From Octopus sinensis (Eukaryota), in contig NW_021835156.1 of the NCBI RefSeq assembly GCF_006345805.1, positions 1 through 42,764 on the forward strand: DNA of 42,764 nt, in the 5' to 3' direction. The notes beneath the pieces are model-generated. The model saw nothing but the letters and a program-made list of their open reading frames with translations, was not told the origin of the DNA and made no database searches. Within the stretch, counting starts at the first letter, position 1. Every line of letters begins with the position of its first letter. The translations under genes were made by a program, and so were the position numbers. Shown here piece after piece: positions 1,915-41,279 of this stretch.

Positions 1915-2308
1915 ATTTCTTTATTTTCCACAGGGGGAGGGGGGGCTAAACATAGATAGAACAAATAAAGGGATTAAGTCGATTACATCGACCCCAGTGC
2001 ATAACTGGTAATTATTTAATCGACCCCAAAAAAGATAAAAGGCAAAGTCAACCTCGGCGGAATTTGGATTCAGAACGTAGCAGCAGACGAAATACCTATT
2101 TCTTTACTACCCACGAGGGGCTAAACACAGAGGAGATAAACAAGGACAGACAGACGGATTAAGTCGATTATATCGACCCCAGTGCTTAACTGGTACTTAA
2201 TTTATCGACCCCGAAAGGATGAAAGGCAAAGTCGACTTAGGCGGAATTTGAACTCAGAACGTAACGGCAGACGAAATACCGCTAAGTACTTCGTCCGGCG
2301 TGCTAACC
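1915..2308 (-). mobile_element. tRNA-derived SINE family 3, tandem dimer
   Basis: Two successive copies of tcgaccccagtgc..aactggta..aatttatcgaccccgaaaggatgaaaggcaaagtc..cctcggcggaattt, joined at gacgaaatacc|tatttcttt (~2096). Confidence 0.85.
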
Positions 2309-3207: not shown

Positions 3208-3535
3208 GTCTGCTACATATGTAGGAAATACTGTCTGTGGGTGTGTTTGTAGAGTTGTTAGCTAACTCCTCCTACATCGTTTTATCGATTTTGATGAAAC
3301 TTGACACGTGAATAGAACTCATGTCTGGAAACCTCATGGCATACTTAGATTGTTGAAAAAATCGATAAGAGAACGCATGGAAGTGATCCTTATATATATA
3401 TCTAATATATTTTAGTTTAAAAGCCAAGGGAAATAACCCATTCGCTCATAGAAGGGATCCTTATATGTAGCCAAGGAAAATAACCCATTCATTTTCCTAA
3501 ATTATTTAGTAATAATCAAATTGAGTATGCTTATT
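3208..3535 (-). mobile_element. Helentron-associated / DINE-1-like non-autonomous element
   Basis: Minus strand carries caagtttcatcaaaatcg..gttagctaac..cagacag..tacatatgtag; homologous to 30570-30940 on the plus strand. Confidence 0.6.
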
Positions 3536-3539
3536 TCTG

Positions 3540-4310
3540 AACTTCAACACAGAATCTTTGTGGCCTTGGATTTGTTCGTTTTCATTTGCTCTTCTGCTTT
3601 CTCCAATTGTTAAAACCTTCCTCGTCTGAGAACCGGTCATGTTGACTTGACATCGAAGTACATTAAAATCAATAAGCAGCACACTTTGATGAATTGTACA
3701 GGAGTCAATTTCTTAAAAGAGGCTCCACATTCTCAAAAATTGTATAGAGCATTGAATGTTTAACATAACGGTAGTACCCAATAAGTCTTCAACTTATCGA
3801 TAATGGCGTCGAGATTCTGGATAGGCATCAGACATTTTTATTTTGACATATAGCTAAGTGTGTCTGAAAGAACATGGACACATACTTTTCTCTGGCTGAG
3901 TCTGGATCCCATGGAGCCGATTACCTATCCATGAAAAAAGACCAGAGGATTCTTCGTCTTCAATATTTTGTAATTCTTTCTTGTTTCGAGGAGGGGTACT
4001 TGGTAGTGCGGTTGGGTCCTCAAAAGAGACATCAAGGTACTTGTTCTTCATTATTAGCTTCTGAGTTTCCTTCCGTCGAATCAAAGACAGATTTCTGTAA
4101 GGCGTTTTTTTTTTTGATACAGCAGTATTGTTTTCAATTGTCTTAGAAATGTCTTTCTTCTGAGCATCAGACAGTTGATTTATTCGTGGCATTTTTAAAT
4201 ATTCTGTGTCCGGGTATAATGTATAATCGGAATTAAAACAAAAGAAAATGGTTTCAAAAATAAGAGAAAGCTGGAACTGATAACAGCAACGTAGACTCAA
4301 GCTATTTTAT
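3540..4310 (-). mobile_element. Decayed hAT (ZMYM1/DUF4371-like) transposon fragment, unit 1
   Basis: N-terminal MPRINQLSDAQKK...SFEDPTALP aligns with 5470-5860; 3540-3590 aligns with 6311-6360. Confidence 0.5.
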
Positions 4311-4318
4311 GTTCATAC

Positions 4319-4814
4319 CCTGTTTCCTAGTGACTACTGTCTTGGATACAATTGTTAATCACTTATTTATTTCCCCCAGATAATTTGCGGCAATTACGAA
4401 CTACTGTGAATTTAATAATATACAAGACATTTCTATTGATGACCTCTTCAAGGGAATATTCAAATACAATTTTACTTTGGATTGTAATTTACAGCTTTCT
4501 TTAATGCCAACAACTTGTATCACTAACATATACCATTTACGCACTGGATACTCGAGGACAAAATCGTTAAAAATATTGGTAAACACCCCGATGTCGGGAG
4601 CACCTCATCCCGAAATCGATGAGAAGTATTTGCCTGAGCCCGAATCAATAACGGAAGCAGAATTAATGAATAACAAACGGGATTCGAAAGACGAAACGGT
4701 TAACAAGAAAGGAGCGTCAAATGTACCACTAGATTCCTACAAAATCTCGGTCATGCAACTGATGACAATAAGCACTTCAAGATGATTACAACACCACTGG
4801 ACCAGAACAACATA
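4319..4814 (+). pseudogene. EB1/MAPRE-like pseudogene fragment A (frameshifted)
   Basis: Aligns to ~8960-9440 (QDISIDDLFKGIFKYNF vs KDIPIDDLIKGTFKHNF; SGAPHPE vs SGTPNPE; caccactggaccagaacaacat vs cggcactggaacagaacaacat). 4319-4359 matches 9537-9577. Confidence 0.85.
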
Positions 4815-5870
4815 GGATGAGAACTTAACATAGTAAGAAGCAGCAGCTTGTCCAACCAGATTCAAAGAATGAGTAGCGCAGGGAATGAAAACTGCAGCCA
4901 GATTATTTCCCTTGAGTATAGCTTGCATTCCTGTATAGTGAACGGACATATTAATGGCGTTGTCATAGAACTGTCTCCTGCAGACTTTATACCTGCTTAT
5001 ATCAGGAATTCTAAGACAGACGCAACCAGCGCTTTTGATTTGTGGGATCCAGTTTGCAGAAAACTTAATAACCTCATTGGTTTACAAGGAATAACGTAAT
5101 GCTCAATTGCTGTTATTTGGTAAACATATTCCCGGTCTGGTGTTCAATCTACAGAATAGGAAATACTTGGCAGTTTTAAGTTCTCCAACAATATAATTCT
5201 TGACATTTTGTCATAAACAGAACAATTTCTTCGTAGACATGGTAGGTAATAAGTATGATTAGTAACACTACTAATATTACCAAATGTTCTCAAGCGATCC
5301 GTGAGAAATGGATCAAATTGTGCTAGTAGTTCCATAATTCCGGGAAAATTCCCATTGTGTTTAGTGCCAATATTCTTTTCACTCTAAATGCCAAATTTCT
5401 CGCAGCTAAGAATATTGTCTCAAACAAAATACGGCACAATTCTTCAGTCCAGTATTTCGTGTTTCCTTTCCGGTTTACTATGAATGACAAAACATGATGA
5501 TTCTCCGCCTTCAATATTTTGAGGTGATACGTTCTTGCTATTTTCTGCAGATGTATTTGGGGTTGCGGCTGGGTCCTCAAAAGAGACATCTGATACTGGT
5601 TCTTCATCTTTAGCTCCTGAGATTCCATTTTTTTTTTTGAAGCAAAGAATCACTTTTGTAAGGCGCATGTGTCTATGCCAATAAAGCAGCACTGTTTTCA
5701 ACTTCATCCTCAAAAAAAGTTTTATTTTCTAGCTCCAGACATTTGAATTTTCCGTGGTACTTTTAGATATTATGTGTTAGAGTATAATATATAATCTGAA
5801 ATGAAGCAAAAGAAAATAGTTTCAAAAATAGATTAAACCTGGAAGTGATAACTGGAACATACTCATTCCA
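4815..5870 (-). mobile_element. Decayed hAT (ZMYM1/DUF4371-like) transposase, unit 2
   Basis: Minus-strand motifs PRKIQMSGARK, TIFLAARNLAFR, ELLAQFDPFL and GMQAILKGNNLAAVFIPCATHSLNLVG (hAT CxxH motif), broken by stops and frameshifts. Confidence 0.8.
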
Positions 5871-5879
5871 TTTACTCCT

Positions 5880-6215
5880 GCTGCAGTCTCCGACGGGCTA
5901 ATGTTTTGGATACAACCGTTAATCATTCTTTTTACAGCAGATATTCTGAAGCTATTACGGACTACTGTGGATTCAATTTTATGTAGGACATTCTTATTGA
6001 TATCCTGAACAAAAGAATGTTGAAACACTTTTTCATTGAGTTGGGATTTAAAGCTATCTTTGATGCCAAATACATCTTGTATCACTTTGATATACGTCAG
6101 CTACGCACTCAATATTGGAGGGAACAAATCGTCAATTAAGAATGTTGGTGATACCTTCAAGTCGGGAGCACCTCACCCTGATATGAGAAAAATTCGCCCG
6201 AAATCGAAGCAGGTA
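5880..6215 (+). pseudogene. EB1/MAPRE-like pseudogene fragment B
   Basis: FKAIFDAKYILYHFDIRQLRTQYW vs FKAFFDANYNKHPYDICQLRAQYC; after a frameshift KNVGDTFKSGAPHPD vs KNVGDTPKSGTPNPE. Confidence 0.85.
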
Positions 6216-6219
6216 ATAT

Positions 6220-6400
6220 AACTGCTTATCACTTCTGGGATTGCCAGTATATCATCTTTTCCTGGACTTGTTTTACCAATTTTCAAGTAAATTCTCTACA
6301 TAAAAGATTGAACTTCAACGCAGAATCTTTGTGGCATTGTCTTTGTTCATGTTTCCATCCATCGTTATTTTATTGTATTCCATATTCTGAAGCACATTCA
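6220..6400 (-). mobile_element. Probable start of a third hAT-derived unit
   Basis: aacttcaacgcagaatctttgtggc (6311) matches aacttcaacacagaatctttgtggc (~3540). Confidence 0.4.
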
Positions 6401-7033
6401 AGTCACATTTAAAAAATAAAAATCTCACCACCTTCCCTCTGCATCGTACCTTTAACAAAAAAATTTTACTTGTGTTTTATCTTCTTTGCTTTCTTTTCTA
6501 TTTCCGTCGGAATTTTCTGTTTTAAGGCCTTAAATCACCCAGCGAAATTTTTCTTTTTTGTTTTTGCATAATCGTATGAATTCCTGTGTGTAGAACACAA
6601 ATTTGCAGACGTTTTCTAGAAATTCCCAAAAAACATGTTTTGAGGTGATATCAGGGCTATTTAGCTGTTAAGCCAACATTCTGGACGGTCATAATTTTAA
6701 ACTGTGATTTTAAAATAAAAATTCAAAACATTTTTAAATTTCGAAAAATTGAAAAAACATAGTTGTTTTTTCCCGTAATTGCGTGAATCCCAGTGATTAG
6801 AATACAAATTCGCAAAAAAATTGTCTAAAAATTCCAAAATGTAAAAAAGTTATGAGGCCTTTTTATGGCGTTCTCAAAGCAGAATTCCACTGTACCCTTT
6901 CGTTTTCATAGTTTTGCCATTCGTAAAGGACTGATAAAGAAATAACAGAAAATCGTTTATAAAACTATTCTTGTCTACTCTAGGCGTCCATCTCTTCGGG
7001 ATATGCATACCGTTGTCCCCAAAAGAACTACAG

Positions 7034-7036
<3 letters not shown>

Positions 7037-7086
<50 letters not shown>

Positions 7087-7421
7087 TGAGTGAGAGAGCA
7101 GTTCATGCCATCAAAGTACACTGGGGTAAAATATACGAAGCCCAATATACCCATCATGACTACCCGTCTGATAAAGGTACAACCAGGCACATGCATCACA
7201 ACCATATGTGCGTGACATGGTGATCTCATATCAAGATAAACAGCACATGACCTTGCAGGTGGGGCCCAGTTAGAATTTTCTCAGTTGAGTAGCCCATCCC
7301 GCTCAAACGGTCCCTGAATAAGGGTGTTTAAGGATGTTGAAAGAACCACCCATGTTTCCAGAGGTGAATTATTCAAACCCCAAAGAATCCCTCTCTACAC
7401 ATGGCTATGATGCTCCCCCAC

Positions 7422-7459
<38 letters not shown>

Positions 7460-7470
7460 TATTATTATTG
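7037..7470. mobile_element. Interspersed non-coding repeat flanked by (TTA)n on both sides
   Basis: ~335-bp GC-richer island between two (TTA)n tracts; a short related piece (gacactacccgtct..t.....agggta) lies at ~9800-9850. Confidence 0.5.
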
Positions 7471-8755
7471 TTATTTTTGCAGCAGAAGATTTAAAATTTC
7501 GAATGAATATAAACGTTAAGATATTAAGCATACTGAGGAAACTGGTTAAAAGCAATTAACAAGTGTAGCACAGCATCGCCCTAAAGACTTCATTCCTTTA
7601 AATATCACCAAGCCAGTGAAGCATTCTTTGTCGAACACTCTGTACTTGACATGGTGTTTCCGTGAGAGAATTCAAAGGCGGTTTTCTTATTTCTTCCGTC
7701 GGGTAATTTGTTTTACTAGAAAACCATCTTGTCGGATAGATACTGATAATTTTTTACTCACTTCCTTTGGGAGTGAGGACATGGAATATCAGAAGAACTA
7801 TAACAAAACATTTTTGTTCTATGCAGTAAGAACTCTGTGTAACCTAGTCTACTGATTCGTTGTATCGCGGAGAATGGCCAGCAACAATCCACTTCACGAG
7901 CCTCATTTATTCTGGGATGTGCGCATCGTCTCCCTGCATCTTCTGTTGTTTAAACCCCACCCTTTTTTTTTCTGTGTTCCTTACTTTGGTTCCTTTATGC
8001 TGTTTTGAAGACGAAACCATTGTTAAGCTCCACAGTGTAGTAAAGATAAATTAGATAAAGATTATCGTATCTATACAACAAATTCAGTTTGCATTCAATT
8101 GAAAACCTTGCAGAGATGTTGTACCAAGACGCATTATTTATCTTCTTAAATTAACTGATCTTGATAGTTGAACTTGTTGACCCCACCCGCTCAGAACTCA
8201 TCTGTCTAGTTCAGTTGAAACAGTATTTGAAAAAGCCAGAACAAATGTTGCAAAGCATTTTGCGCAATTCACCAAATAATTCTGCCAATTCTTTGCCTTG
8301 TAGCACACACACACACACACACACACAAACGCACACGCATACACACACACACACACATACATTCTCTCATTCTTTCTCTCAAACTTACACATGCACATAT
8401 ATACACGTGTGTCTGTAGAGAATGATCATAGCATAGGTTTAATATAACGTTGTTATTTCAGGAAAGTATTATGCAGAAAATAAAAACGAAGTCTTTGCGT
8501 TGCTACGTCATTAACAAATCACGTTTTATTACTAAGTTTTTCTTCAAACAGAAAAAATTGTCTATTCTCGAAAAAACCACACAAAAAACAAAAACAAAAA
8601 CAGCAAAATCAAAGGAATCTAAAAGTAACAGACGCTATCGTAAAATAGTTAACGTTTAAATTCTTTAACGTCAATAATATAAGTGGAATCTGTAATTTTC
8701 TTTATTCTGTTGACTTGTCGCTCTCTCTCATTACTTCATTTGTCATATTTCCATT

Positions 8756-9661
8756 ATGGCAGTCACTCATTTTCATGTAAAAGATATCAGTAAAACTGAA
8801 TTGCTCAACTGGTTTCGAAAATACCTTTCACCAGAGATTCAGAGCATCGAAGAACTTGCAACAGGAGCAGATTTTTGCCTCGGCATGGAAATATTATTTC
8901 CAGGTACCATAGATATCAAAAAAGTAAAATTCGTTGATGCTTGTGACTATTTCAGACGCATGAATTTCAAGCAATTTAGAAATGCTCTGAATACGATTAA
9001 TTTGAAGAAGGACATTCCTATTGATGACCTTATAAAGGGAACGTTTAAGCACAACTTTTTCTTTGGATTGTGGTTTAAAGCATTCTTTGATGCGAATTAC
9101 AACAAGCATCCCTATGACATATGCCAGCTACGCGCTCAATATTGCAAGAAAAAAACGATAATTTTAAAGAATGTCGGTGATACCCCGAAGTCGGGAACAC
9201 CTAATCCTGAAGTCGATAAGGATACACCCGAACCCGAAGCAATAATCGAAGCACAATTAGGAAATGGGGAACATGATACGAAATGTAATAAATATACGAC
9301 AAACACGGAAACCAAAACAGATGATAAGAAAGATGAATCAAAAATACCAGTAGATTCCGACGAAATCTCGAGCGCTGTGACTGCTAATGACAATAACTAC
9401 TTCAAGTCAATTACAACGGCACTGGAACAGAACAACATTAGTTTAGAACATGATAACATGCAACTGAAGTATTCTTTGGATACTGTTAAGAAAAGGAACA
9501 GTTTGTTGTCAGAAGCAATGAAAAAAATAGAAAGCGCCTGTTTCCCAGTAGCTAATGTGTTGGATACAACTGATTATTTGACACCGAAATTAATTCAAAC
9601 TTTGAAAGTATTTTACGAGGAAATTGTAGAGATTTTAAAAGACACTAATGATAAATTTTAA
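8756..9661 (+). CDS. Intronless divergent EB1/MAPRE-family microtubule end-binding protein (CH domain, linker, coiled coil/EBH), probable retrogene
   Basis: 301-aa open ORF. ELLNWF, IEELATGADFC, LFPGTIDIKKVKF, IPIDDLIKGTFKHNFFFGLWFKAFFDANY match the EB1 CH domain; LEHDNMQLKYSLDTVKK..KIESAC and EEIVEILKDTNDKF align without gaps to EB1 LMQQVNVLKLTVEDLEK..NIELIC and QRIVDILYATDEGF. Confidence 0.9.
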   Translation: MAVTHFHVKDISKTELLNWFRKYLSPEIQSIEELATGADFCLGMEILFPGTIDIKKVKFVDACDYFRRMNFKQFRNALNTINLKKDIPIDDLIKGTFKHNFFFGLWFKAFFDANYNKHPYDICQLRAQYCKKKTIILKNVGDTPKSGTPNPEVDKDTPEPEAIIEAQLGNGEHDTKCNKYTTNTETKTDDKKDESKIPVDSDEISSAVTANDNNYFKSITTALEQNNISLEHDNMQLKYSLDTVKKRNSLLSEAMKKIESACFPVANVLDTTDYLTPKLIQTLKVFYEEIVEILKDTNDKF

Positions 9662-9670
9662 AACGTAATT

Positions 9671-9676
9671 AATAAA
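9671..9676 (+). promoter_or_regulatory. Candidate polyadenylation signal of the EB1-like gene
   Basis: AATAAA 10 nt after the stop codon; weak evidence in AT-rich DNA. Confidence 0.3.
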
Positions 9677-10154
9677 GGATCAGCTAATGACAGCTTTTAA
9701 TGAAACCTCATTTGTTGATCATTTATTTCTCACGGCAGAAAAAGAAAAAATCTTGAATGTAAGTTTTTATTTCATCATAACATTATGTATGTGTACCAGC
9801 GGATATACCCGACACTACCCGTCTATTGTATCAGGGTAACTGCATGCAGTAAATCTGCCTTACAAAATAACTGCCAAAGAAGATCTTTGTCTATTTTTCA
9901 TTAACGAAAAATTACAGCAAAAATGTGTTGCTCAATAACAATCTTGGTTCTATGATAAAATGATCATCGGAGTTTCCACTATTTGAAGAGCCCCCATGAA
10001 GCTGGTCATGTGAAAAGACAGGCTTCTTTTAAGGTCAGTTTATGCACAAGTATTTTAAGAAATTTCAATAAGTGCCCTCGAGATGTATGTATTGCTGACA
10101 ATAGCGAAGAATCGAAATCGAAACCTTTTAAATTGACTACATCGTTACAGTTGT

Positions 10155-10690
10155 TTCATCATCATTCATCATTGTTCGACCGTGGTCGAGACAATGGAAT
10201 TTACCATGTTGCGCCAGACTTCACGGTCCATCATAGCATTACGGAGGTCCTGTTGCTGGATGCCTGTATCCCTGGAGATTACATCAGGGTAGGAGAGTGT
10301 GCGCCCTCTGGTATTGCGAGTAGATGGCTTCCAGAAGAGAAGAGTAGAAATTACTTCTTTTTCAGCTCTACAACAATGTCCAGCAAACTGGACTCTTCTA
10401 TTTTTCACAAGAGATGATACAGGTGGTAATTTCCCATATATTTGCATTTTAGTTGGATGGCGCCTCCACGAGAGATTTTGAGCTCTCATAAGGAGGCGAG
10501 TGTAGGTTCCGTCAAACCGCCTCTCAAGCTTCTTTGATAACGTCCAGGTTTCTGAGCCATAGAGTAGAATTGGTTCGACTGTGGCTTTGAATATTTCAAG
10601 TTTGAAGTCTCTACTTAGATTTGATGACCAGATCTTATGCATTTCATTACAGGCTGACCAGGCCATACCCTTTCTAGTTAGAAAGTTGTT
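10155..10690 (-). mobile_element. 5'-truncated RTE-clade LINE (RT C-terminus and short tail)
   Basis: ORF 10169-10666: IFKATVEPILLYGSETWTL...RRVQFAGHC...DREVWR; ends in a (GAT)-rich tail at ~10155-10170. Confidence 0.9.
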
Positions 10691-12344: not shown

Positions 12345-12735
12345 GATTTCAAATTTTGGCGCAAGGCCAGCAATTTCGGGGGCAGAGTAAGTCGTTTACA
12401 TCGACCTCAGTACTCAACTGGTACTTAATTTTTCGGCCCTGATATATATGAAAGGCAATTTCGACCTCGACAAAATTTGAACTCAGCACATGAAGACGAA
12501 ATACCTATTTCTTTATTCCCCACAAGGGGCTAAACACAGAGGCGACAAACAAGGAAAGACAAAGGGATTAAGTCGATTATATCGATCCCAGTGCGTAACT
12601 GGTTCTTAATTTATCGACCCCGAAGGGATGAAAAGCAAAGTCGACCATGGCAGAATTTGAACTCAGAACGTTACGGCCGACAAAATACTGCTAAGCATTT
12701 TGCCCGGCGTGCTTACGATTCTGCCAACTCGCTGC
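12345..12735 (-). mobile_element. SINE family 3 dimer (two different tails)
   Basis: Same gacgaaatacc|tatttcttt junction (~12505) as at 2096. Confidence 0.85.
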
Positions 12736-12767
12736 ATTACTAAATGTTGGTATTAGCAACAACTTTA

Positions 12768-13429: not shown

Positions 13430-13877
13430 CCAAAGAGAGCGCCTATGCTGAACTATTAAGAAATCTGCAGTCACTCCGTTATTGGGATCCCGGGATATAT
13501 AACACGCTGCCTAAATACCAACCTTGAGAAATTAGGCTTCTCAAATCCAGAAAGGAGAGAGCTAATTCGAAGACTACAGATCCAATCCGTCACTGGAAGT
13601 GTAAAAATCTGTAAAACTTTCCAGAAGTTTATCATTCAAATATATATTAGCATGTCTGAAATGCTAAATACATACTTTAAGCATACAAATCTGCACATAC
13701 ATGCATACATACATACATACATACATACATACATACATACATACATACATACATACATACATACATACATACATACATGCATGCATGCATGCATACATAC
13801 ATACATACATACATACATACATACATACATACATACATACATACATGCATGCATACATAAACACATACATACATACA

Positions 13878-13909
<32 letters not shown>

Positions 13910-13973
13910 CACATACATTCATATATACATACATACATACACACATACATACACACATACATACATACATACA

Positions 13974-14005
<32 letters not shown>

Positions 14006-14065
14006 CACATACATTCATATATACATACATACATACACACTACATACACACATACATACATACAA

Positions 14066-14097
<32 letters not shown>

Positions 14098-14335
14098 CAC
14101 ATACATTCATATATACATACATACATACACACATACATACACACATACATACATACATACATACATACATACATACATACACACATACATACATACATAC
14201 ATACATATACATACATACATAAAAATGAAAATACCCTGTTATTGATGTTGAAATTCTATTGAAGGAGACTTGGATCTATGTTAGAAATCGGTTCTTCCTC
14301 TATTGACAAGAAATCTTGAAAAAACTGAATAAAAG
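13430..14335 (+). mobile_element. 3' end of an R4/Dong-like (restriction-like endonuclease) LINE with an (ATAC)n-containing 3' region
   Basis: Translation AYAELLRNLQ..GYITRCLNTNLEKLGFSNPERRELIRRLQIQSVTGSVKICKTFQKF resembles the RLE-LINE C-terminus. That the 3' UTR extends across the array is an inference. Confidence 0.55.
13700..14221. repeat. (ATAC)n tetranucleotide array, ~520 bp
   Basis: Directly visible; source of the HTYI/MYVC ORFs. Confidence 0.97.
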
Positions 14336-17348: not shown

Positions 17349-18597
17349 TTTTATTATTAACTTTTTAATGAAGAAATAATGTATTTCACTCATAAAAATA
17401 TTAGTTAAATTAATTTCAATCGTGTTTTGTTTGAGAGAGATTTTTTAATGGTCTTAACTTTCATTATTATTAACTTTTTAATGAAGAAATAATGTATTTC
17501 ACTCATAAAAAAATTAGTTAAATTAATTTCAATCGTGTTTTGTTTGAGAGAGAGATTTTTTAATGGTCTTAACTTTCATTTATTATTAACTTTTTAATGA
17601 AGAATAATGTATTTCACTCATAAAAATATTAGTTAAATTAATTTCAATCGTGTTTTGTTTGAGAGAGATTTTTTAATGGTCTTAACTTTCATTATTATTA
17701 ACTTTTTAATGAAGAAATAATGTATTTCACTCATAAAAATATTAGTTAAATTAATTTCAATCGTGTTTTGTTTGAGAGAGATTTTTTAATGGTCTTAACT
17801 TTCATTTATTATTAACTTTTTAATGAAGAAATAATGTATTTCACTCATAAAAATATTAGTTAAATTAATTTCAATCGTGTTTTGTTTGAGAGAGATTTTT
17901 TAATGGTCTTAACTTTCATTTATTATTAACTTTTTAATGAAGAAATAATGTATTTCACTCATAAAAAATTAGTTAAATTAATTTCAATCGTGTTTTGTTT
18001 GAGAGAGATTTTTTATGGTCTTAACTTTCATTTATTATTAACTTTTTAATGAAGAAATAATGTATTTCACTCATAAAAATATTAGTTAATTAATTTCAAT
18101 CGTGTTTTGTTTGAGAGAGATTTTTTAATGGTCTTAACTTTCATTTATTATAACTTTTTAATGAAGAAATAATGTATTCACTCATAAAAATATTAGTTAA
18201 ATTAATTTCAATCGTGTTTTGTTTGAGAGAGATTTTTTAATGGTCTTAACTTTCATTTATTATTAACTTTTTAATGAAGAAATAATGTATTTCACTCATA
18301 AAAATATTAGTTAAATTAATTTCAATCGTGTTTTGTTTGAGAGAGATTTTTTAATGGTCTTAACTTTCATTTATTATTAACTTTTTAATGAAGAAATAAT
18401 GTATTTCACTCATAAAAATATTAGTTAAATTAATTTCAATCGTGTTTTGTTTGAGAGAGATTTTTTATGGTCTTAACTTTCATTTATTATTAACTTTTTA
18501 ATGAAGAAATAATGTATTTCACTCATAAAAATATTAGTTAAATTAATTTCAATCGTGTTTTGTTTGAGAGAGATTTTTTAATGGTCTTAACTTTCAT
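17349..18597. repeat. Tandem array of a ~114-bp AT-rich unit, ~11 copies
   Basis: Unit tttattattaactttttaatgaagaaataatgtatttcactc..tcaatcgtgttttgtttgagagaga..ggtcttaactttca; copies differ mainly in homopolymer length. Confidence 0.96.
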
Positions 18598-19139
18598 TTT
18601 AGTAGTATCTATGAAAGACCGGTGGGATTATTATTTGTATGGACTATAATTTAGTTATTGCAGTTTACTATTAGCACCCATACAATGTACATTGACTTAT
18701 ATGTCTCTTTGTTGTAGTTTTATTAAAGTTAGTGTTTATTATATAAAAATAATTGAAATAATGTTGTTGTTAGGCTTTTACTTTTATATTATACTACGGA
18801 AGACGGTAGGGATTATAATTTATGTATGACTTAATTAAGTCATCGCTGTTTAGTTACGTATTTAGGAGTGGATATAATTTACTTATGGAATTTGTTTATC
18901 GATACGGTTGTACATTGGGAAGATGTGGTTTCTTTGGTTTGTTTGTTCCCAACAACACTTATTTTAGTGCTGTTGACACCGCCGGATTGAATGGTACTGC
19001 CCAGGTGTCGAAACCATAAAGATATCCGTGAGGCTGCGGATGATGGAGTATGTTGGATAGTCGGTATGATTGTTTTTGTATATATAGAATAGTATTATTT
19101 GATTCTTAGTATGGGTGTGGAATAGTATTATAACACATC

Positions 19140-19209: not shown

Positions 19210-19470
19210 ATATATTATATGTTTCAATCAAAAAGGGAAAAAGCACGAAGAAAAAATGCTAGAAATAAACAACAACGGGAGGTCGTGTTACATGCAAAAT
19301 ATTAACAGAGGCGTGGGGAAGAAAAGAACAGTAGTTTTACTTTTCGTGCAAAGCTCTTGTTCAGATACAAGAGACAGATGAGTGTCCCAGAGAAGACGGA
19401 GGAAAAAAGTCGCCAACGATCCACATGTAGTTGCATAAATATATGTATGTATATGAATATATATGCATGC

Positions 19471-19549
<79 letters not shown>

Positions 19550-19810
19550 GTGTGTGTGTATGTATATGTATGCATAAGTATATATGTGTGTGTATAGCCA
19601 TATATATATTTATGTATATGAATACATATATATGTATATTTATATACATGTATATATATTTATATATATATATATGTATGTATATGTATATATATATGTA
19701 TATCTATATATATGTATGATTATATATATATGTGTGTGTGCATATATATGTGTATATATTTATATATAAGTATATGTATATATATATATATATACACACA
19801 CATACATATA
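19140..19810. repeat. (TA)n/(TATG)n-rich low-complexity tracts
   Basis: Directly visible. Confidence 0.9.
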
Positions 19811-19869
19811 TATTTTCTAAAGCATTCGCTCATTACAAGATCCTTAGACCACTAAAAACGTAAGAGCTA

Positions 19870-20194: not shown

Positions 20195-20978
20195 CTCAAA
20201 CAGTGGTTACTTCATTGCCCCCAACTTGTCTGATATTTTGGAAGACCACCGGTTCAAGTTTCTGGTTGAGTGAAATCCTGCCCCATACGATGATGTTCTG
20301 TCCTCTCCATTAGTCTATCTCCACCACACAGCCCTCGGCATGACCTTCACTCCTTCTCCAAATGCTAATTCTGCCTTCTGCCACGGAAATGCAATGTATA
20401 CTTTCGTCAGAGAAGTCTACAGTCCTCCACTATAGCCAGTTCTGACGTTTTTTATCCGACTGCAGACGGGCCAGTTGATGACGATCTGTGAGGATGGGGA
20501 CCCTAGCCGGACGTCAACAAAGCATATTGAAAGCTCGCATCCGGCGTCGAACTGTCTCTGCACAATTGTCCCTGTGGTGAGTTCCTCTGGTCTACCTAAC
20601 TGATTCCGTTGTCGTCCGGAATCGGTCCTGCAAGTGCTGTCGGTGCAGGTGGCGATCTTGACGTAACCCTCGGTCGTCCACTGTGTGGACGATCATCTGT
20701 ACAGTTTGTGGCACTATATTGTTCCCTCAGTCGCTCCCTTGTTCGAACACTGTAGTTTAAGTCATTGGCAATGATCAATGGATGTTGACCAGCATGGAGA
20801 CGTCCGATGGCTTGTTCCCTCTCATTTCGTGTCAGTCTTGGCATCCTTACTGCGTTCGGGAAACGAGTGACAAGCTGATAAATTTGGATGCCTTTTATAC
20901 CCAGTGAGTCAACGTTTTGCACGTGCATCATCCTTTTCATAAAGTCGTGTTCGCGAGCATTACCATGTTCACGAAAAG
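20195..20978 (-). mobile_element. Decayed Tc1-family transposon
   Basis: ATG at 20844: [19 protein letters not shown]...[12 protein letters not shown] (Tc1 HTH and GRPR motif); downstream RGQNIIVWGRISL (~20270-20310). TIRs not identified. Confidence 0.85.
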
Positions 20979-21090
20979 TATGTATGTATGTATGTATGTA
21001 TGTATGTATGTACGTATGTATGTATGTATGTATGTATGTATGTATGTATGTATGTATGTATGTATGTATGTATGTATGTATGCATGCATG

Positions 21091-21124
<34 letters not shown>

Positions 21125-21210
21125 TGTATGTATGTACGTATGTATGTATGTATGTATGTATGTATGTATGTATGTATGCATGTATGTATGTATGTATGTA
21201 TGCATGTATG

Positions 21211-21244
<34 letters not shown>

Positions 21245-21318
21245 TGTATGTATGCATGTATGTATGTATGTATGTATGTATGCATGTATGTATGTACGTA
21301 TGTATGTATGCCTGTATG

Positions 21319-21352
<34 letters not shown>

Positions 21353-21518
21353 TGTATGTATGTATGTATGTATGTATGTATGTACGTATGTATGTATGTA
21401 TGTATGTATGTATGTACGTACGTACGTATGTATGTATGTATGTATGTATGTATGTATGTATGTATGTATGTATGTATGTATGCATGTATGTATGTATGTA
21501 TGTATGTATGCATGTATG

Positions 21519-21552
<34 letters not shown>

Positions 21553-21602
21553 TGTATGTATGTACGTATGTATGTATGTATGTATGTATGTATGCATGTA
21601 TG

Positions 21603-21636
<34 letters not shown>

Positions 21637-22030
21637 TGTACGTATGTATGTATGTATGTATGTATGTATGTATGTATGTACGTATGTATGTATGTATGTA
21701 TGTATGTGAGTATGCATGTATGTTTGTATGTATGTATGTATATGTTTGTATGTATGTATGTATGTGTTTATGTATGTATGTATGCATGTATATATATAAA
21801 TATGTATACATATGATGCATATATATGTATATATATAATATGTATGCATATATGTATGTATATGTATATATATATGTATATATATATGTATATACATATA
21901 TGTATATATATATTTGTATATATTTTGTATATATATATACGTATGTATATATATGTATGTATGAATATGTACATATTTATGCATGTATATGTATATATAT
22001 ATATGTATGTGTATATGTAGATGTGTATGC
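20978..22030. repeat. (TATG)n array (~810 bp) grading into (TA)-rich repeat
   Basis: Directly visible; source of the 182-478 aa artefact ORFs. Confidence 0.97.
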
Positions 22031-22569
22031 ATGTGTGTCTCTTTGTGTCTCTATTTGCCTTTCCACCACATGACGACCAGTATTGACTTTTAGGTCTCCG
22101 TGACATAAGCAACTCAGTGAGACAGAGTGACAAACTACGTACGAAACTTTAAATAAACACCAGAGTGGCCTGTTCCACTAACCCTAAAAGGCAGTGCTCC
22201 AGTATGACAACTGTTTAATCATTGAAAGATGCAAATAACGAATTAGTAAAATAGCATATATTACTACGTTGCTCATCTGCAACATAGTCTGTATGTTATA
22301 TATATATATACAAATAAACATTGGAAAAAGGAAGGAATACAGGGAATCTACCGAAGCTCTGACAACACAGTACAATGTCATAACATATACTGCTGCGAAA
22401 AATAATACAAAAACTTCATAATGGTATTCTGTACAGTTTTCGTCTTGCAATATCAGCACTCACGTTATTTGCCCCCCAGAGGTTATTGTAGATACTTACT
22501 TGCAATTGTAGTAGAGAGTTCATCGTCATTGCACGTAACTGAACACGAAGCCAATGATTCTTTTTTTTT

Positions 22570-22849
22570 AGCATACATACATACATACATGTATACATAC
22601 ATATATGCACACACACATACATACATACATACATGCATACATACATACATACATACATATATGCACACATACATAACATACATACATACATACATACATA
22701 CATACGTACGTACGTACATAATACAAACATAGTACATGTATACATACATTATATATATATATAATATATATATATATAATAATAGATATAGATATAGATA
22801 TAGATATAGATATATACATATATGTACATATACATAATTCGATAGATAG

Positions 22850-22904
<55 letters not shown>

Positions 22905-23086
22905 CACATAAATGAATAAATATATATATAGATTGATAGATGCACAGGTAGAGAGATAGATACACAAAAAATATTGCGCAGCCTGATGCAGCACTATTTG
23001 TGTGTGTATGTGTGTGTGTGTATGTGTGTGTGTGTGTGTGTGTATGTGTGTGTGTGTGTACGTATGTGTACATTTGTGTGTGTGTG

Positions 23087-23919: not shown

Positions 23920-24400
<481 letters not shown>

Positions 24401-25089: not shown

Positions 25090-25090
25090 G

Positions 25091-25126
<36 letters not shown>

Positions 25127-25210: not shown

Positions 25211-25272
<62 letters not shown>

Positions 25273-38230: not shown

Positions 38231-39244
38231 TTAGATGAGACTAACATTACCAAATACCCGTAACTATCTCTATCGCAGATGTCTCATATTGACGTATGGA
38301 GAAGACCTGTGTGCAGCACACTTCCTCAACATAAAAAGAATACTTTAATGTGATTTTTTGTGCTCTACGAATACATTTTTTGTAATTTGTTTTGCAGATA
38401 ACCATAAATTGAAGACCGACTAGTGAGCCGGACGTTGGGCAGCACTGGTTTACATGAAGAATGCGAAGAAAAACTATTTGTTTACATATAGAATTCAAAC
38501 GGAAGTTGGTATCCAAAAAGAGCGTATCGTTTAATATTAAGCATTATACTTTATTTCTGATATACAAATAAACGTTATGGTTTACAGATTTTTAATATTT
38601 ATTTACAATTTCAAAGTTATGACTTTTAATAACATGTGGCTAAAATAAATTGGATGCAGTCCGACTTCTTTTTTAACGAGGTTCGTAGATTGTAAAATGT
38701 TTAGCTATCATCCACATTGCGATTTGCTTCGAAAAAGTGCTTGAACCACAAAGCAAAAAAGAAATTGAACTTAAAAGATCCTCGTACAAGATCATCTATT
38801 GGTATGGTCTTATCGACCTTCAAATTATTCAGAGCCATTCTCGATTTCATAAAATTCACCTCTTTAAAATATTCGTAGGAAATAACTTTTTTTCACTTTC
38901 CTCATGTTGATAACTCCTGGGAACATTATGTTAATTCCGATACAGAAGTGCAGCCCCGTTGAAAGCTCTGATGTCAGTCATGCCCGGTTTCAGATTCTCT
39001 CTGTAACATGTTACTAATTCCTGGCTACACATTTCTTAATTTGCGTCACCACCACCATGGAAATCTTAAAGAAACGAGAAATAGACATGTCAACAAGGAA
39101 ACGAGAATTACAGATTTCACTGGTATTTTGACGTTAAAGTATGTAAACTATTGAAAAAGAACGAGTTATTGTTGTAGGATAATTTCACTTAATTCTAGAT
39201 CATTTTGATAATGCCGTTTTCTGTTTTAAGAACTAATAATCCTT

Positions 39245-39890: not shown

Positions 39891-41279
39891 TTTTGGCATT
39901 TTAAATTACTGTAGAACTTTCCGTTGACTTACGTCGTTCGGGTCAATAAAACAAATAGGAGCAAAATTAATAGAAAGTGGGAAAAAAGGGGAGGGGAATA
40001 AACAGTGAAACATGGAAGGAGATGAAGCAAGGGCGTGCAATCCCAGAATAAATGAGCCCCGTGAATTGGAGTTTTTTCTGCTCCATTCTCCATAAAGCTA
40101 AACAATAGTCTAGAATTGACAGAATTGTTCGTGTATTGAACCAAAATGATTTGTTATAGTTCTTCCCATTTTTCATCGATCATTTAACCAGTCTCTTCAG
40201 TAGACAAATAATGTCCTACTATAAAAACTAATTCAGTCCTAGCTAGTGAAGATTGATTTGTAGGAAACCCCACTGAATTCAGCCAGTGACATGGTATGTG
40301 AACAACCAATTTACCAAAAGAAAAAAGGAAACTAACAAAAGAACTGAAGCTCCTTGGGAGACAACGGTAAGCATATCCCGAAGAGATGGACGCCATCAAG
40401 ATAATATTTCTAGCTGGCATTCTGGCATTTAACAGTAATAAAGAGGTAATAGGCTCTGAACACAAAGGGAATTAGGCGGAAGTATTTCATGTATCTGAAT
40501 TTTTCATGAGTACCTGTACATTTTACTTTTGATATTCAAGCTAATTTGGAAATTGTATATGCATGCCGAGAGAAGAAAAGCTGCTCCTGTTGCAAATTCA
40601 ATATTTTAAATATCCGGTGATTTTTTTTTTTTTACACTAATTTAGCAATCCGTATTTGCTCATGTCTTTTACCTGAAAGTGTAACTACCATAGATGTAAT
40701 CTAAGAAATGAGAGAGAGACATGTCTACAAATCAAAATTTCAGTTATTTTCAAGGTTAAAATATTTATACGTTAACTATTGAAAAAAAAATGTTAGTGTT
40801 TGATAACTTCACGTAATGTAAGATTTGTTTAATTATGCTAGTTGTGTGTGTTAGAATATACGATCATTTTTCTGTTTAAAAAAAAGATAAAACGTGATTT
40901 GCTAATGACGAAGCAACGCAAAGCAAGGCCTTGTTTTTACTATGTACAGATAATATTCTTGAGATATTTTTCGTACGAAATCTTTATGTCTTTCTCTTCT
41001 TTTACCTCTCTTTTACCTCACTCCCTCTCTCCTTTCCTCCCTAATATTCTTCTCTATTGCTTCTGTGCCCTCCTCTTTTTCTCTTCTCCCACTAGCACGT
41101 AACCGTATAAAAAACCGTGTCTCAATCGGTATTTTATTTTAATATTGTTTCTTCTCTTCAGCCGTCCTCTTCGCTCCTTGTTGACGTGGATTATCCTACA
41201 ACAGTTTGTTATAGTTTTCTTACATTTTCCGTTTGCAGTGATTTTGTTAAATCTTTGAATTATATATATTGCTATGACA

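What the first reader, a model, noticed from the sequence alone, without database searches (positions are those of the whole stretch)
8756..9661. Intronless EB1 paralogue that has lost the +TIP recruitment surfaces
Seen: the CH domain motifs and the coiled coil are retained, but the gap-free alignment turns human EB1 DFYF (215-218) into SLLS and LYA (246-248) into LKD, adds ~14 aa after IESAC, and stops at the equivalent of F253, with no acidic EEY/F tail. Established: F216, Y217, L221, I224, L246, Y247 and A248 form the SxIP-binding cleft, and the EEY tail binds CAP-Gly proteins (CLIP-170, p150Glued). Inference: a retrogene-like EB that may bind microtubules and dimerise but cannot recruit SxIP or CAP-Gly partners. 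It could act as a tissue-specific (for example testis) competitor or heterodimer modulator. A 906-bp frame left open while neighbouring copies decayed suggests selection.
Basis: partly seen in the sequence, partly recalled or inferred. Interest (0 to 1): 0.7.

Follow-up and report, generated by a model that had tools for sequence, protein, structure and literature searches.

The report
Divergent single-exon octopus EB1-like gene
This is a real, selectively maintained, intron-free octopus relative of the microtubule-tip protein EB1 that keeps the microtubule-binding head and a dimer-forming stalk but has rebuilt its partner-binding end; flies have similar testis-specific EB1 offshoots, so it is a moderately interesting but not unprecedented gene.

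Summary
The ORF at 8756-9661 (+, 301 aa) is real. Residues 9-126 are an EB-type CH domain (E 1e-24 to solved EB1/EB3 CH domains). The C-terminal 96 aa keep EB1's heptad register, but DFYF has become SLLS and there is no acidic EEY tail. Pfam, hhalign, PDB and a 1.84-billion-protein search do not recognise this end as an EBH domain.

The gene is not a young pseudogene. Syntenic orthologues exist in O. vulgaris, O. bimaculoides and a third octopod. dN/dS is 0.13-0.36 in the CH domain, 0.19-0.33 in the C-terminus and about 1 in the linker. The only indels are in-frame.

It is one branch of an octopod-only clade of three single-exon EB-like genes, one of which is shared with Argonauta. Four decayed copies lie in the window.

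- EB1 K100 and Q102, whose mutation impairs microtubule binding, are T and K here.
- The linker is acidic (net -6, against +4 to +12 in canonical EBs).
- The C-terminus is the most conserved part of the protein.

I favour a homodimeric microtubule adaptor with a new partner surface, like Drosophila Mst27D, over a passive EB1 competitor. Expression and biochemistry were not tested.

The parts
8756..9661 (+). Complete single-exon CDS (301 aa plus TAA) of the divergent EB-like protein, 'group A'. Orthologues: O. vulgaris CAI9734740.1 and O. bimaculoides XP_014787826.1.
8756..9145 (+). Residues 1-130: EB-type calponin-homology (CH) domain. The start MAV... is homologous to the canonical EB start MAVNVY. 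EB1 K100 is T96 and Q102 is K98 here.
   Evidence: dN/dS 0.13-0.36
9146..9370 (+). Residues 131-205: fast-evolving, probably disordered linker. It is acidic: net charge -6 over residues 127-214, against +4 to +12 in 77 canonical EBs.
   Evidence: dN/dS 0.85-1.8; charge; no predicted helices
9362..9568 (+). Residues 203-271: long helix with a leucine-zipper-like heptad. Hydrophobic d positions run from 216 to 265. Asn sits at a positions 213, 227, 234 and 248. The register matches the EB1 coiled coil.
9500..9511 (+). S249-L250-L251-S252, in place of EB1 D215-F216-Y217-F218 (the aromatic patch of the SxIP pocket).
   Evidence: pocket residues from PMC12695022
9527..9541 (+). I258-E259-S260-A261-C262, the anchor motif equivalent to EB1 I224-E225-L226-I227-C228. 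E259 and C262 are invariant across all alignments.
9584..9658 (+). Residues 277-301: second helix of the hairpin, PKLIQTLKVFYEEIVEILKDTNDKF. In the favoured alignment L294-K295-D296 corresponds to EB1 L246-Y247-A248. The protein ends at F301, equivalent to EB1 F253, with no acidic EEY/F tail.
8462..8755 (+). Conserved upstream flank (putative promoter / 5'UTR). The block 8462-8535 is almost invariant in four genomes and contains TACGTCA at 8504-8510. This flank is also copied in decayed copy psi-4.
9671..9676 (+). AATAAA polyadenylation-signal-like hexamer 10 nt after the stop codon, invariant in four genomes.
9737..9750 (+). A-rich tract AGAAAAAGAAAAAA. It could be a poly(A) remnant of an old retrocopy. 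It is followed by half of a 19/25 direct repeat (8449-8473 / 9763-9787). Weak evidence only.
4382..4880 (+). Decayed copy psi-1, equivalent to residues 85-261, with stops and frameshifts. It is absent from the orthologous interval of O. bimaculoides.
5970..6218 (+). Decayed copy psi-2, equivalent to residues 81-164, with in-frame stops and a frameshift.
38665..38971 (-). Decayed copy psi-3, equivalent to residues 33-116 of the CH domain, with a frameshift and a stop. Patchy homology to the gene's upstream flank continues to 39559.
40520..40923 (-). Decayed copy psi-4: upstream flank plus residues 5-56, with stops.

Best explanation
The ORF is a functional, single-exon, lineage-specific member of the EB (RP/EB, MAPRE) family in the Octopus vulgaris group.

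It belongs to an octopod-only clade of three intron-free EB-like genes. The clade most likely began with one retroposition of an EB mRNA and then spread by DNA duplication. The window's four dead copies are such duplicates.

The protein has three parts:
- an EB-type CH head;
- a fast-evolving acidic linker;
- a strongly conserved C-terminal module that descends from the EB coiled coil plus EBH hairpin. This module has a longer hairpin, no aromatic FYF patch and no acidic EEY tail.

Proposed mechanism (inferred). The protein forms parallel homodimers through the Asn-rich leucine zipper and attaches to microtubules through the paired CH domains. It probably has altered nucleotide-state or lattice preference, because EB1 K100 and Q102 are replaced and the linker charge is inverted. 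It uses the rebuilt, constrained C-terminal bundle to bind a lineage-specific partner instead of SxIP or CAP-Gly +TIPs. In this view it is a specialised microtubule adaptor or bundler of the kind shown for Drosophila Mst27D.

Shown here: gene integrity, domain identity, selection, family structure and the residue changes.
Inferred: dimerisation, microtubule binding mode, loss of SxIP/CAP-Gly binding, and the existence of a new partner.
For: Gene and domain identity:
- CH domain at E 1e-24 to solved EB1/EB3.
- Orthologues of 299-301 aa at syntenic loci in O. vulgaris, O. bimaculoides and a third octopod.

Selection:
- dN/dS 0.13-0.36 in the CH domain, 0.19-0.33 in the C-terminus, about 1 in the linker.
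- Nonsynonymous deficit against neutral simulation: P 0.015 (O. bimaculoides) and 0 of 5000 simulations (third octopod).
- The CDS has two indels, both 3 bp. The flanks have 15 per 1219 bp and 12 per 752 bp, mostly not multiples of 3.
- The C-terminal 96 aa have the lowest dN of the three regions.

C-terminal module:
- Heptad register identical to EB1, hydrophobic d positions throughout, Asn at four a positions.
- AlphaFold2 hairpin 203-271 / 277-300 at pLDDT 87.6. The low-confidence single-sequence model gives helices 202-225 and 231-271 in place of the single long helix, and the same 277-300 helix.
- Directed EBH profile remnant: P 0.008 for this gene, P 0.0005 for its 2xCH relative.

Family and origin:
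- Family members P0004/P0131 (including Argonauta) and P0132-P0134 all have single-exon CDSs.
- Their CH domains form a clade with 100% bootstrap.
- Canonical mollusc EB1 (Mytilus) has at least 6 coding exons over about 9 kb.

Microtubule-binding differences:
- K100 to T96 and Q102 to K98.
- Linker net charge -6 against a canonical mean of +6.8.

Precedent: Mst27D is a retroposed, testis-specific EB paralogue similar to EB1 only in the CH domain. It homodimerises through its C-terminal region, does not pair with Eb1, binds along the microtubule lattice, bundles microtubules, and binds Nup358 through its C-terminus (PMC10359004).
Against: - No expression data could be obtained. The third-species contig looks genomic, not transcript-derived.
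- No biochemical test of dimerisation, microtubule binding or partner binding is possible here.
- The structure model is a monomer, built on an alignment that already imposed the EB1-like register. Foldseek found no specific match, as expected for a helical hairpin.
- Overall nucleotide divergence of the CDS (0.065; 0.146) is close to that of the flanks (0.06-0.08; 0.16-0.17). Constraint is therefore moderate and shows mainly in the nonsynonymous/synonymous ratio and in the indels.
- The canonical octopus EB1 gene was not retrieved, so the parent and the date of origin are not fixed.
- Retroposition hallmarks are weak.
- An alternative alignment keeps a Tyr at the Y247 position, so residual SxIP binding is not excluded.
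Confidence: 0.6

Rival explanations
1. The protein binds microtubule ends and/or heterodimerises with canonical EB1 but recruits nothing. It therefore acts as a tissue-specific competitor or dominant-negative modulator of the +TIP network.
For: - The CH domain and the coiled-coil register are retained.
- The FYF patch and the EEY tail are absent.
- The gene is under selection.
Against: - A pure 'blank' would not need a C-terminus that is the most conserved part of the protein, with 91-96% identity over the last 91 aa across three species and the lowest dN.
- The hairpin is extended and conserved, not truncated.
- Four Asn at a positions face V200 and R214 of EB1 at the aligned sites. This disfavours mixed dimers (inference).
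- The functional analogue Mst27D does not co-precipitate Eb1 (PMC10359004).
- Replacement of K100 and Q102, plus an acidic linker, make efficient competition for the EB site at growing ends doubtful.
Confidence: 0.15
2. The EBH pocket is remodelled but still binds SxIP-type or related linear motifs. Under this view the protein is an EB with shifted ligand specificity, not one that has lost +TIP recruitment.
For: - Of the SxIP-contact residues listed in PMC12695022 (Y217, F218, L221, R222, I224, E225, L246, Y247, T249), I258, E259, L294 and T297 are identical.
- M255 and K256 are conservative replacements, and Y217 to L251 stays hydrophobic.
- The alternative alignment places F286-Y287 at L246-Y247.
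- The protein ends in an aromatic residue (F301) that is conserved in three species.
Against: - F218 is Ser, and Y247 is Lys in the profile-supported alignment.
- The flexible tail that closes over the peptide in EB1 is missing ('dock-and-lock', PMC12695022).
- Pfam EB1 gives no hit at E<=10.
Confidence: 0.15
3. The ORF is a neutrally drifting young pseudogene, or an ORF kept open by chance, like its neighbours.
For: - Four sibling copies in the same window are dead.
- The linker evolves at dN/dS about 1.
- CDS nucleotide divergence is similar to flank divergence.
- There is no expression evidence.
Against: - The ORF is intact in four genomes spanning dS up to about 0.3-0.4.
- Simulated neutral change at the observed divergence leaves no stop in only 1-10% of runs per pair.
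- Indels are few and in-frame, against 11-14 expected from flank rates.
- The nonsynonymous deficit is significant in the CH domain and the C-terminus.
- The clade it belongs to predates the Octopus-Argonauta split.
Confidence: 0.05
4. The CH domain has been re-purposed away from microtubules, for example to actin or another CH ligand. Under this view the protein is no longer a microtubule-associated protein at all.
For: - K100 and Q102 are replaced, 26 of 64 conserved CH positions have changed, and the linker is acidic.
Against: - Many microtubule-facing basic residues are kept: K55/K56 (EB1 K59/K60), K85 (K89) and K108 (K112), by alignment with EB1 numbering from my own knowledge.
- The Q102-to-K change shifts a positive charge by two residues and does not remove it.
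- The change is shared by all three octopod groups, which suggests a conserved alternative binding mode.
- Mst27D, which is equally divergent, still binds microtubules.
Confidence: 0.05

Closest known systems
Canonical EB1/EB3 (MAPRE1/3; Bim1, Mal3): core microtubule plus-end tracking hubs
   Same: - N-terminal EB-type CH domain (E 1e-24, gap-free over about 115 aa).
- Same domain order: CH, linker, coiled coil, helix hairpin.
- Same heptad register through the coiled coil.
- Conserved IE..C anchor, and L, T and F at EB1 positions 246, 249 and 253 in the favoured alignment.
   Different: - No recognisable EBH domain (Pfam PF03271 negative).
- FYF aromatic patch is LLS, and Y247 is K.
- The hairpin is about 14 aa longer.
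- There is no acidic EEY/F tail.
- The linker is acidic, not basic.
- K100 and Q102 are replaced.
- The CDS is a single exon, against at least 6 coding exons in Mytilus EB1.
- Distribution is restricted to octopods.
Drosophila Mst27D and the other testis-specific fly EB1-family genes (CG15306, CG32371, CG2955, CG18190) (PMC10359004)
   Same: - Lineage-specific EB offshoots.
- Similarity to EB1 essentially confined to the CH domain.
- C-terminal coiled coil retained.
- EBH/EEY +TIP-recruiting features lost.
- Origin by retroposition proposed for Mst27D.
- Multiple paralogues per genome.
   Different: - Independent origin. The octopod genes form their own clade; fly sequences were not included in my tree.
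- The octopus C-terminus still shows a faint EBH remnant and register.
- Expression site, lattice binding or bundling, and partner (Nup358 in flies) are unknown for the octopus protein.
Octopod paralogue groups B (2xCH, O. bimaculoides XP_052822784.1, O. vulgaris CAI9719419.1 = O. sinensis XP_036356937.1, Argonauta hians P0131) and C (O. vulgaris CAI9736750.1, O. bimaculoides P0132)
   Same: - Single-exon CDS.
- Shared derived CH signature: G-x-D-x-C-(L/V)-G-(M/I)-x-I-L-F..., F-K-x-N-F-x-F-G-x-W-F-K-x-F-F, and EB1 Q102 replaced by K.
- Monophyletic with 100% bootstrap.
- Group B keeps a KLQ(R/Q)IE(T/N)IC remnant of the EBH.
   Different: - Group B has two tandem CH domains and stops right after the second hairpin helix.
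- Group C has a basic, Ser-rich tail and no EBH remnant.
- Group A (this gene) was found only in Octopus-group genomes, not in Argonauta.

Membership tests
EB (RP/EB, MAPRE) protein family | N-terminal EB-type calponin-homology domain | tested here: met
   phmmer against PDB gives EB1/EB3 CH domains at E 1e-24 to 1e-20, gap-free over residues 9-126. 38 of 64 highly conserved CH columns are retained. The generic Pfam CH model scores 23.5 bits, just below its 26-bit cut-off.
EB (RP/EB, MAPRE) protein family | Parallel coiled coil that dimerises the protein | tested here: inconclusive
   Heptad pattern with hydrophobic d positions from 216 to 265, in the EB1 register. AlphaFold2 predicts a long helix 203-271 at pLDDT about 90. 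Actual dimerisation cannot be tested with these tools.
EB (RP/EB, MAPRE) protein family | EB-homology (EBH) domain, Pfam PF03271, with the FYF aromatic patch and LYA that form the SxIP pocket | tested here: not met
   No PF03271 hit at E<=10. hhalign, PDB profile and 1.84-billion-protein searches are all negative. Only 5 of 21 conserved EBH columns are kept. DFYF is SLLS, and LYA is LKD in the favoured alignment. A directed profile detects a remnant only (5 bits, P 0.008).
EB (RP/EB, MAPRE) protein family | Acidic C-terminal tail ending in EEY/F (CAP-Gly ligand) | tested here: not met
   The protein ends ...ILKDTN(D/E)KF in all three species. Net charge of the last 20 aa is -2, against -4 to -10 (mean -7.9) in 77 canonical EBs.
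EB (RP/EB, MAPRE) protein family | Autonomous tracking of growing microtubule ends | not testable with these tools
   Sequence hints argue for caution. EB1 K100 and Q102 (the K100E/Q102E double mutant impairs microtubule binding; PMC5042579) are T96 and K98 here. The linker has net charge -6.
Retrogene (processed, retroposed gene copy) | Intron-free CDS derived from a multi-exon parent | tested here: inconclusive
   The CDS is one uninterrupted ORF in four genomes. Canonical mollusc EB1 (Mytilus) has at least 6 coding exons over about 9 kb. The canonical octopus EB1 gene itself was not retrieved. All three octopod groups are intron-free, so any retroposition predates this gene.
Retrogene (processed, retroposed gene copy) | Poly(A) remnant and target-site duplications at the borders | tested here: inconclusive
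   There is an A-rich 14-mer at 9737-9750 and a 19/25 direct repeat at 8449-8473 / 9763-9787. No dinucleotide shuffle reaches 19/25, but 0.5-2.4% of real genomic windows do. At this age such hallmarks are expected to be eroded.
Mst27D-like specialised EB paralogues (Drosophila) | Similarity to EB1 confined to the CH domain, with a C-terminal coiled-coil region that has its own function | tested here: met
   The C-terminus is under the strongest constraint.
Mst27D-like specialised EB paralogues (Drosophila) | Testis-specific expression, lattice binding or bundling, and a specific cargo bound by the C-terminus | not testable with these tools
   No expression or interaction data are accessible. 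No paper links octopus and this gene.
Mst27D-like specialised EB paralogues (Drosophila) | Common descent with the fly genes | not tested
   Fly sequences were not retrieved. The octopod genes form an exclusive clade among the sequences sampled, so convergence is the working assumption.

The most novel reading that the evidence does not exclude
Octopods independently evolved a small family of intron-free EB-derived microtubule adaptors. In group A the EBH four-helix bundle has been lengthened and re-surfaced to recognise a new, lineage-specific ligand class. The CH domain (Q102 to K, K100 to T) and the acidic linker change microtubule recognition from GTP-cap tracking to another lattice state. 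This would be a convergent counterpart of Drosophila Mst27D, possibly tied to octopod sperm-head shaping or neuronal microtubule organisation.
Probability: 0.3. Interest if true: 0.6.

Novelty: new variant of a known kind. Interest (0 to 1): 0.42.

Why it matters
EB proteins are the central hub of the microtubule plus-end network, and their EBH pocket and EEY tail are almost invariant across eukaryotes. A naturally re-engineered EB would be useful in two ways, given that it keeps the CH head and coiled-coil register, has replaced the ligand pocket, tail, linker charge and two key microtubule-contact residues, and has been held under selection across octopus species.

First, it is a ready-made separation-of-function variant. 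It can show which EB features are needed for end-tracking as opposed to lattice binding, and how the EBH bundle can evolve new specificity.

Second, together with the fly Mst27D group, it suggests that retroposed EB copies are repeatedly recruited as specialised microtubule adaptors.

The gene is already annotated in public octopus genomes as 'RP/EB family member-like'. The advance is in interpretation, not discovery, and functional data are lacking.

Tried and rejected
1. Unbiased recognition of the C-terminal domain. Pfam at E<=10, hhalign against canonical EBs, a PDB profile search and an hmmsearch of 1.84 billion representatives all gave nothing. The only extra hit, P0011, is a spurious repeat protein.

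2. Single-sequence AlphaFold2 of the whole protein. Mean pLDDT was 40.6, so it was usable only for helix boundaries.

3. Foldseek of the C-terminal model against PDB. There was no match at E<=0.001. The top hits were generic helical hairpins (Mediator Med11/22, designed bundles), and EB1 was not among the top 50. This is uninformative for so simple a fold.

4. Retrieving the canonical octopus EB1 to fix the parent gene, its exon structure and the duplication date. The second homologue search (query P0005) listed only its 120 best hits, mostly arthropods, with no Octopus entry. All three searches are now used. Mytilus EB1 served as a mollusc proxy.

5. Expression evidence. The Logan contig carrying the third orthologue is collinear with 3.6 kb of genomic flank including repeats, so it is genomic, not a transcript. 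Its run accession appears in no paper. Literature searches linking octopus to EB1/MAPRE found nothing relevant.

6. Retroposition hallmarks. A candidate target-site duplication and an A-rich tract were found but are only marginally above genomic background. I do not rely on them.

7. The alternative terminal alignment (P277 = EB1 P237, VFY = ILY). I considered it and ranked it second.

8. The bacterial promoter/terminator scan is irrelevant for a eukaryotic locus and was ignored.
Full report
**1. What is in the sequence**

The window is cephalopod DNA. It is AT-rich, full of microsatellites and interspersed repeats. It is 96-97% identical to chromosome OX597829.1 of Octopus vulgaris (GCA_951406725.2). 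It is collinear, at about 89% identity, with O. bimaculoides chromosome CM046616.1.

[quoted passage not shown] The O. bimaculoides orthologue is XP_014787826.1 (299 aa, 89% identity). A third octopod orthologue sits on a Logan contig (299 aa, 80% identity). The gene is therefore already annotated in public genomes. I found no paper that discusses it.

**2. Checking the observation**

*CH domain.* Residues 9-126 align without gaps to the solved CH domains of human EB1 and EB3 (E 1e-24 to 1e-20). Against 77 canonical EBs, 38 of 64 columns that are at least 90% conserved in the CH region are retained.

*C-terminal region, unbiased searches.* Only 5 of 21 conserved EBH columns are retained: E259, C262, L294, T297 and F301. 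Unbiased methods do not recognise the last 91-101 aa as an EBH domain:
- Pfam PF03271 gives nothing at E<=10.
- hhalign against a canonical alignment gives nothing.
- A profile search of PDB gives nothing.
- A profile search of 1.84 billion representative proteins returns only the gene's own cluster.

*C-terminal region, directed test.* I built an HMM from the EBH regions of the 77 canonical EBs. It scores 4.4-5.0 bits on the octopus C-terminus, a score reached by 0.8% of 2000 shuffles. It scores 7.8 bits (0.05% of shuffles) on the related 2xCH paralogue.

- KERDFYFGKLRDIE.LC aligns with KKRNSLLSEAMKKIESAC.
- A 14-residue insertion follows.
- I(L/M)DILYATE(D/E)GF aligns with IVEILKDTNDKF.
- The protein ends at the F253 equivalent.

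Two larger MAFFT alignments agree. One small MAFFT run preferred P277 = P237 and VFY = ILY. I keep that as a rival reading.

*Independent support from the heptad pattern*:
- Octopus d positions: L237, V244, L251, I258.
- Octopus a positions: N234, L241, N248, M255, C262.
- These fall exactly on EB1 L203, L210, Y217, I224 (d) and V200, V207, R214, L221, C228 (a). The EB1 numbering is from my own knowledge of the human sequence. It is consistent with the residues named in PMC12695022.

*Structure model.* AlphaFold2 on residues 201-301 with a 26-sequence alignment gives pLDDT 87.6, a helix at 203-271, a five-residue loop and a helix at 277-300. The low-confidence single-sequence model gives helices 202-225 and 231-271 in place of the single long helix, and the same 277-300 helix. 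Compared with EB1, both arms of the hairpin are about 7-8 residues longer. This explains the 14-residue 'insertion' as an extended hairpin tip that preserves the register. The alignment given to AlphaFold2 already carried this register, so the model is supportive, not independent.

*Verdict on the observation.* It is confirmed, with one caveat: the assignment of the last helix rests on weak similarity.

**3. Is it under selection?**

Yes.

| Region | vs O. bimaculoides | vs third octopod |
|---|---|---|
| Whole CDS | 0.43-0.54 | 0.25-0.32 |
| CH domain | 0.26-0.36 | 0.13-0.16 |
| Linker 131-205 | 1.8 (NG86 only; YN00 failed) | 0.98-1.17 |
| C-terminus 206-301 | 0.19-0.20 | 0.20-0.28 |

These are pairwise dN/dS values by NG86 and YN00. 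The O. bimaculoides versus third-octopod comparison falls in the same ranges.

- I placed the observed number of substitutions at random, keeping the observed transition fraction. The observed nonsynonymous count is reached in 1.5% of runs for O. bimaculoides and in none of 5000 for the third species. It is significant separately for the CH domain and the C-terminus, but not for the linker.
- The same simulations leave the frame free of stops in only 1-10% of runs per pair.
- The flanks carry 15 indels per 1219 bp and 12 per 752 bp, mostly not multiples of three. The CDS has two indels, both of 3 bp.
- The C-terminal 96 aa have the lowest dN of the three regions (0.022 and 0.049).

One caution applies. 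Total nucleotide divergence of the CDS is close to that of the flanks. The flanks contain strongly conserved blocks: 8462-8535 upstream, and about 250 bp downstream including an invariant AATAAA at 9671-9676. They are probably UTR or regulatory sequence, not neutral DNA.

**4. Context: a family, not a lone retrogene**

A profile search with the octopus sequences found two further groups:
- Group B is a 441/428-aa protein with two tandem CH domains. It is found in O. bimaculoides (XP_052822784.1), in O. vulgaris and O. sinensis (identical sequence), and in Argonauta hians.
- Group C is a 328-371-aa protein with one CH domain and a basic Ser-rich tail. It is found in O. bimaculoides, O. vulgaris and a Logan sample.

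All of these have uninterrupted CDSs and lie on different chromosomes.

The CH domains of groups A, B (both halves) and C share derived features. These are G-x-D-x-C-L-G-M-E-I-L-F-P-G instead of GAAYCQFMDMLFPG, F-K-x-N-F-x-F-G-x-W-F-K-x-F-F instead of FQDNFEFVQWFKKFF, and Q102 replaced by K. They form a clade with 100% bootstrap in a neighbour-joining tree against 15 canonical EBs. Long-branch attraction cannot be excluded, but the shared signatures are direct evidence.

Group B is shared with Argonauta, so the family predates the Octopus-Argonauta split.

Canonical mollusc EB1 (Mytilus) has at least 6 coding exons over about 9 kb. One ancient retroposition followed by DNA-level duplication is therefore the simplest history. 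This is an inference: the canonical octopus EB1 was not retrieved.

Classic hallmarks at this locus are marginal. There is an A-rich 14-mer at 9737-9750 and a 19/25 direct repeat, seen in 0.5-2.4% of random genomic windows.

The four decayed copies in the window are:
- psi-1, 4382-4880 (+)
- psi-2, 5970-6218 (+)
- psi-3, 38665-38971 (-)
- psi-4, 40520-40923 (-)

They are closest to this gene, not to group B or to canonical EBs. They carry stops and frameshifts. Psi-3 and psi-4 also share its upstream non-coding flank, so they are segmental duplicates. The interval holding psi-1 and psi-2 is absent from the O. bimaculoides orthologous position: window 3305-7963 corresponds to 24 bp in L001.

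**5. How it most likely works**

*Shown:*
- an EB CH head;
- a fast-evolving acidic linker;
- a conserved coiled coil in the EB1 register;
- a longer hairpin;
- no FYF patch;
- no acidic EEY tail (last 20 aa net -2, against -4 to -10).

*The SxIP pocket.* PMC12695022 lists nine SxIP-contact residues. Their fate here is:

| EB1 residue | Octopus residue |
|---|---|
| Y217 | L251 |
| F218 | S252 |
| L221 | M255 |
| R222 | K256 |
| I224 | I258 |
| E225 | E259 |
| L246 | L294 |
| Y247 | K295 |
| T249 | T297 |

The pocket is remodelled, not erased. However, the aromatic floor is gone, and so is the flexible tail that locks the ligand in place.

- EB1 K100 and Q102 are T96 and K98 here, and similarly changed in all three octopod groups. 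The K100E/Q102E double mutant impairs microtubule binding (PMC5042579).
- The linker has net charge -6, whereas all 77 canonical linkers are +4 to +12.

*Inferred mechanism.* The protein is a parallel homodimer. Asn at four a positions favours in-register self-pairing and disfavours pairing with EB1, where the aligned a positions are Val and Arg. It binds microtubules through two CH domains, with altered preference. It uses the conserved, rebuilt bundle to engage a new partner.

The experimentally characterised analogue is Drosophila Mst27D (PMC10359004):
- It is retroposed and testis-specific.
- It resembles EB1 only in the CH domain.
- It homodimerises through its C-terminal region and does not co-precipitate Eb1.
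- It decorates the lattice instead of forming comets.
- It bundles microtubules, and its C-terminus binds Nup358.

I rate 'functional, selected gene of a lineage-specific EB-like family' at about 0.9. I rate the adaptor mechanism at about 0.4-0.5. The combined confidence is 0.6.

**6. Rivals**

It does not explain why the C-terminus is the most constrained region, and it is weakened by the CH and linker changes.
- Retained but shifted SxIP-type binding (0.15) is kept alive by the conserved I, E, L and T contacts and by the alternative alignment.
- Pseudogene or neutral ORF (0.05) is contradicted by section 3.
- A CH domain re-purposed away from microtubules (0.05) cannot be excluded from sequence alone.

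**7. Comparison, novelty and score**

The protein works like, and descends from, EB proteins. It fails two defining features of the family as usually diagnosed, the EBH domain and the EEY tail. It is best called an EB-like or EB-derived protein.

Divergent, retroposed, tissue-specific EB paralogues are known in flies. The octopod clade appears to be an independent instance with its own C-terminal solution. I class it as a new variant of a known kind.

A cytoskeleton specialist would find it a useful natural separation-of-function variant, not a surprise. It is already annotated, and no functional or expression data could be obtained. Interest is 0.42.

Noticed in passing
window 17350-18599: A 113-bp AT-rich satellite in 11 tandem copies at 97% identity. 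The 20.9-kb O. bimaculoides locus L001 has only one matching stretch (18721-18837), which hits the window array about 11 times. The array therefore appears to have expanded in the vulgaris lineage. The O. vulgaris locus L004 likewise matches the array only through one stretch (17842-17960), so the copy number in that assembly was not checked.
   Followed up: partly
window 10156-10689 (ORF 10169-10666, - strand): An insertion present in the window and in O. vulgaris but absent from O. bimaculoides and the third octopod, about 500 bp downstream of the gene. Its 165-aa ORF looks like the C-terminal end of a retroelement polyprotein. The only Pfam hit is a weak DUF6451 match.
   Followed up: partly
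window 8462-8535, especially 8496-8522: An upstream block that is nearly invariant in four octopod genomes, more conserved than the coding linker. It contains GTTGCTACGTCATTAACAAATCACG, with a CRE-like TACGTCA at 8504-8510 and a GTTGCT half X-box-like element. It could be the promoter or an enhancer. This was not tested.
   Followed up: no
window 9662-9900, GTAAGT at 9759-9764: The 3' flank is about 92% identical across four genomes for at least 240 bp past the stop codon. It contains an invariant splice-donor-like AATG|GTAAGT about 100 nt after the stop. This suggests a longer or spliced 3'UTR, or a conserved regulatory element.
   Followed up: no
window 36579-37328 (- strand); 20596-20900 (- strand): Two transposase relics. 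One is a 249-aa ORF with a weak DUF4371 (hAT/ZBED-type) match. The other is a Tc1/mariner-like helix-turn-helix N-terminal fragment fused in frame to a microsatellite 'ORF' (no Pfam hit for the fragment).
   Followed up: partly
window 13695-14221, 20978-22038, 22572-22906, 25081-25532, 19435-19813, 23932-24396: Very long (ACAT)n, (GTAT)n, (CATA)n, (AGAT)n and (AT)n microsatellites, up to about 1 kb. They generate most of the long spurious 'ORFs' in the mechanical ORF list.
   Followed up: yes
window 2097-2307, 12506-12739, 29614-29839, 35782-36014, 38002-38233 and others: A roughly 230-bp interspersed (SINE-like) repeat present at least 8 times in the window on both strands at 85-92% identity. 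It is also present in the O. bimaculoides locus.
   Followed up: no
L003 10001-11326 (O. bimaculoides CM046603.1); L006 3001-4287 (Argonauta hians): The group B paralogue is a single uninterrupted ORF encoding two tandem EB-type CH domains followed by a short EBH remnant (KLQRIETICRNNPDE...). It is conserved between Octopus and Argonauta, and identical in O. vulgaris and O. sinensis. An EB-derived protein with two CH domains in one chain would not need dimerisation to present two microtubule-binding heads.
   Followed up: partly
window 3305-7963 versus L001 9239-9263: The 4.6-kb interval that carries decayed copies psi-1 and psi-2 has no counterpart at the orthologous O. bimaculoides position, although these copies are only 68-74% identical to the gene, more diverged than the 89% between the species. 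Either O. bimaculoides deleted the interval, or it was moved in from elsewhere in the vulgaris lineage.
   Followed up: no
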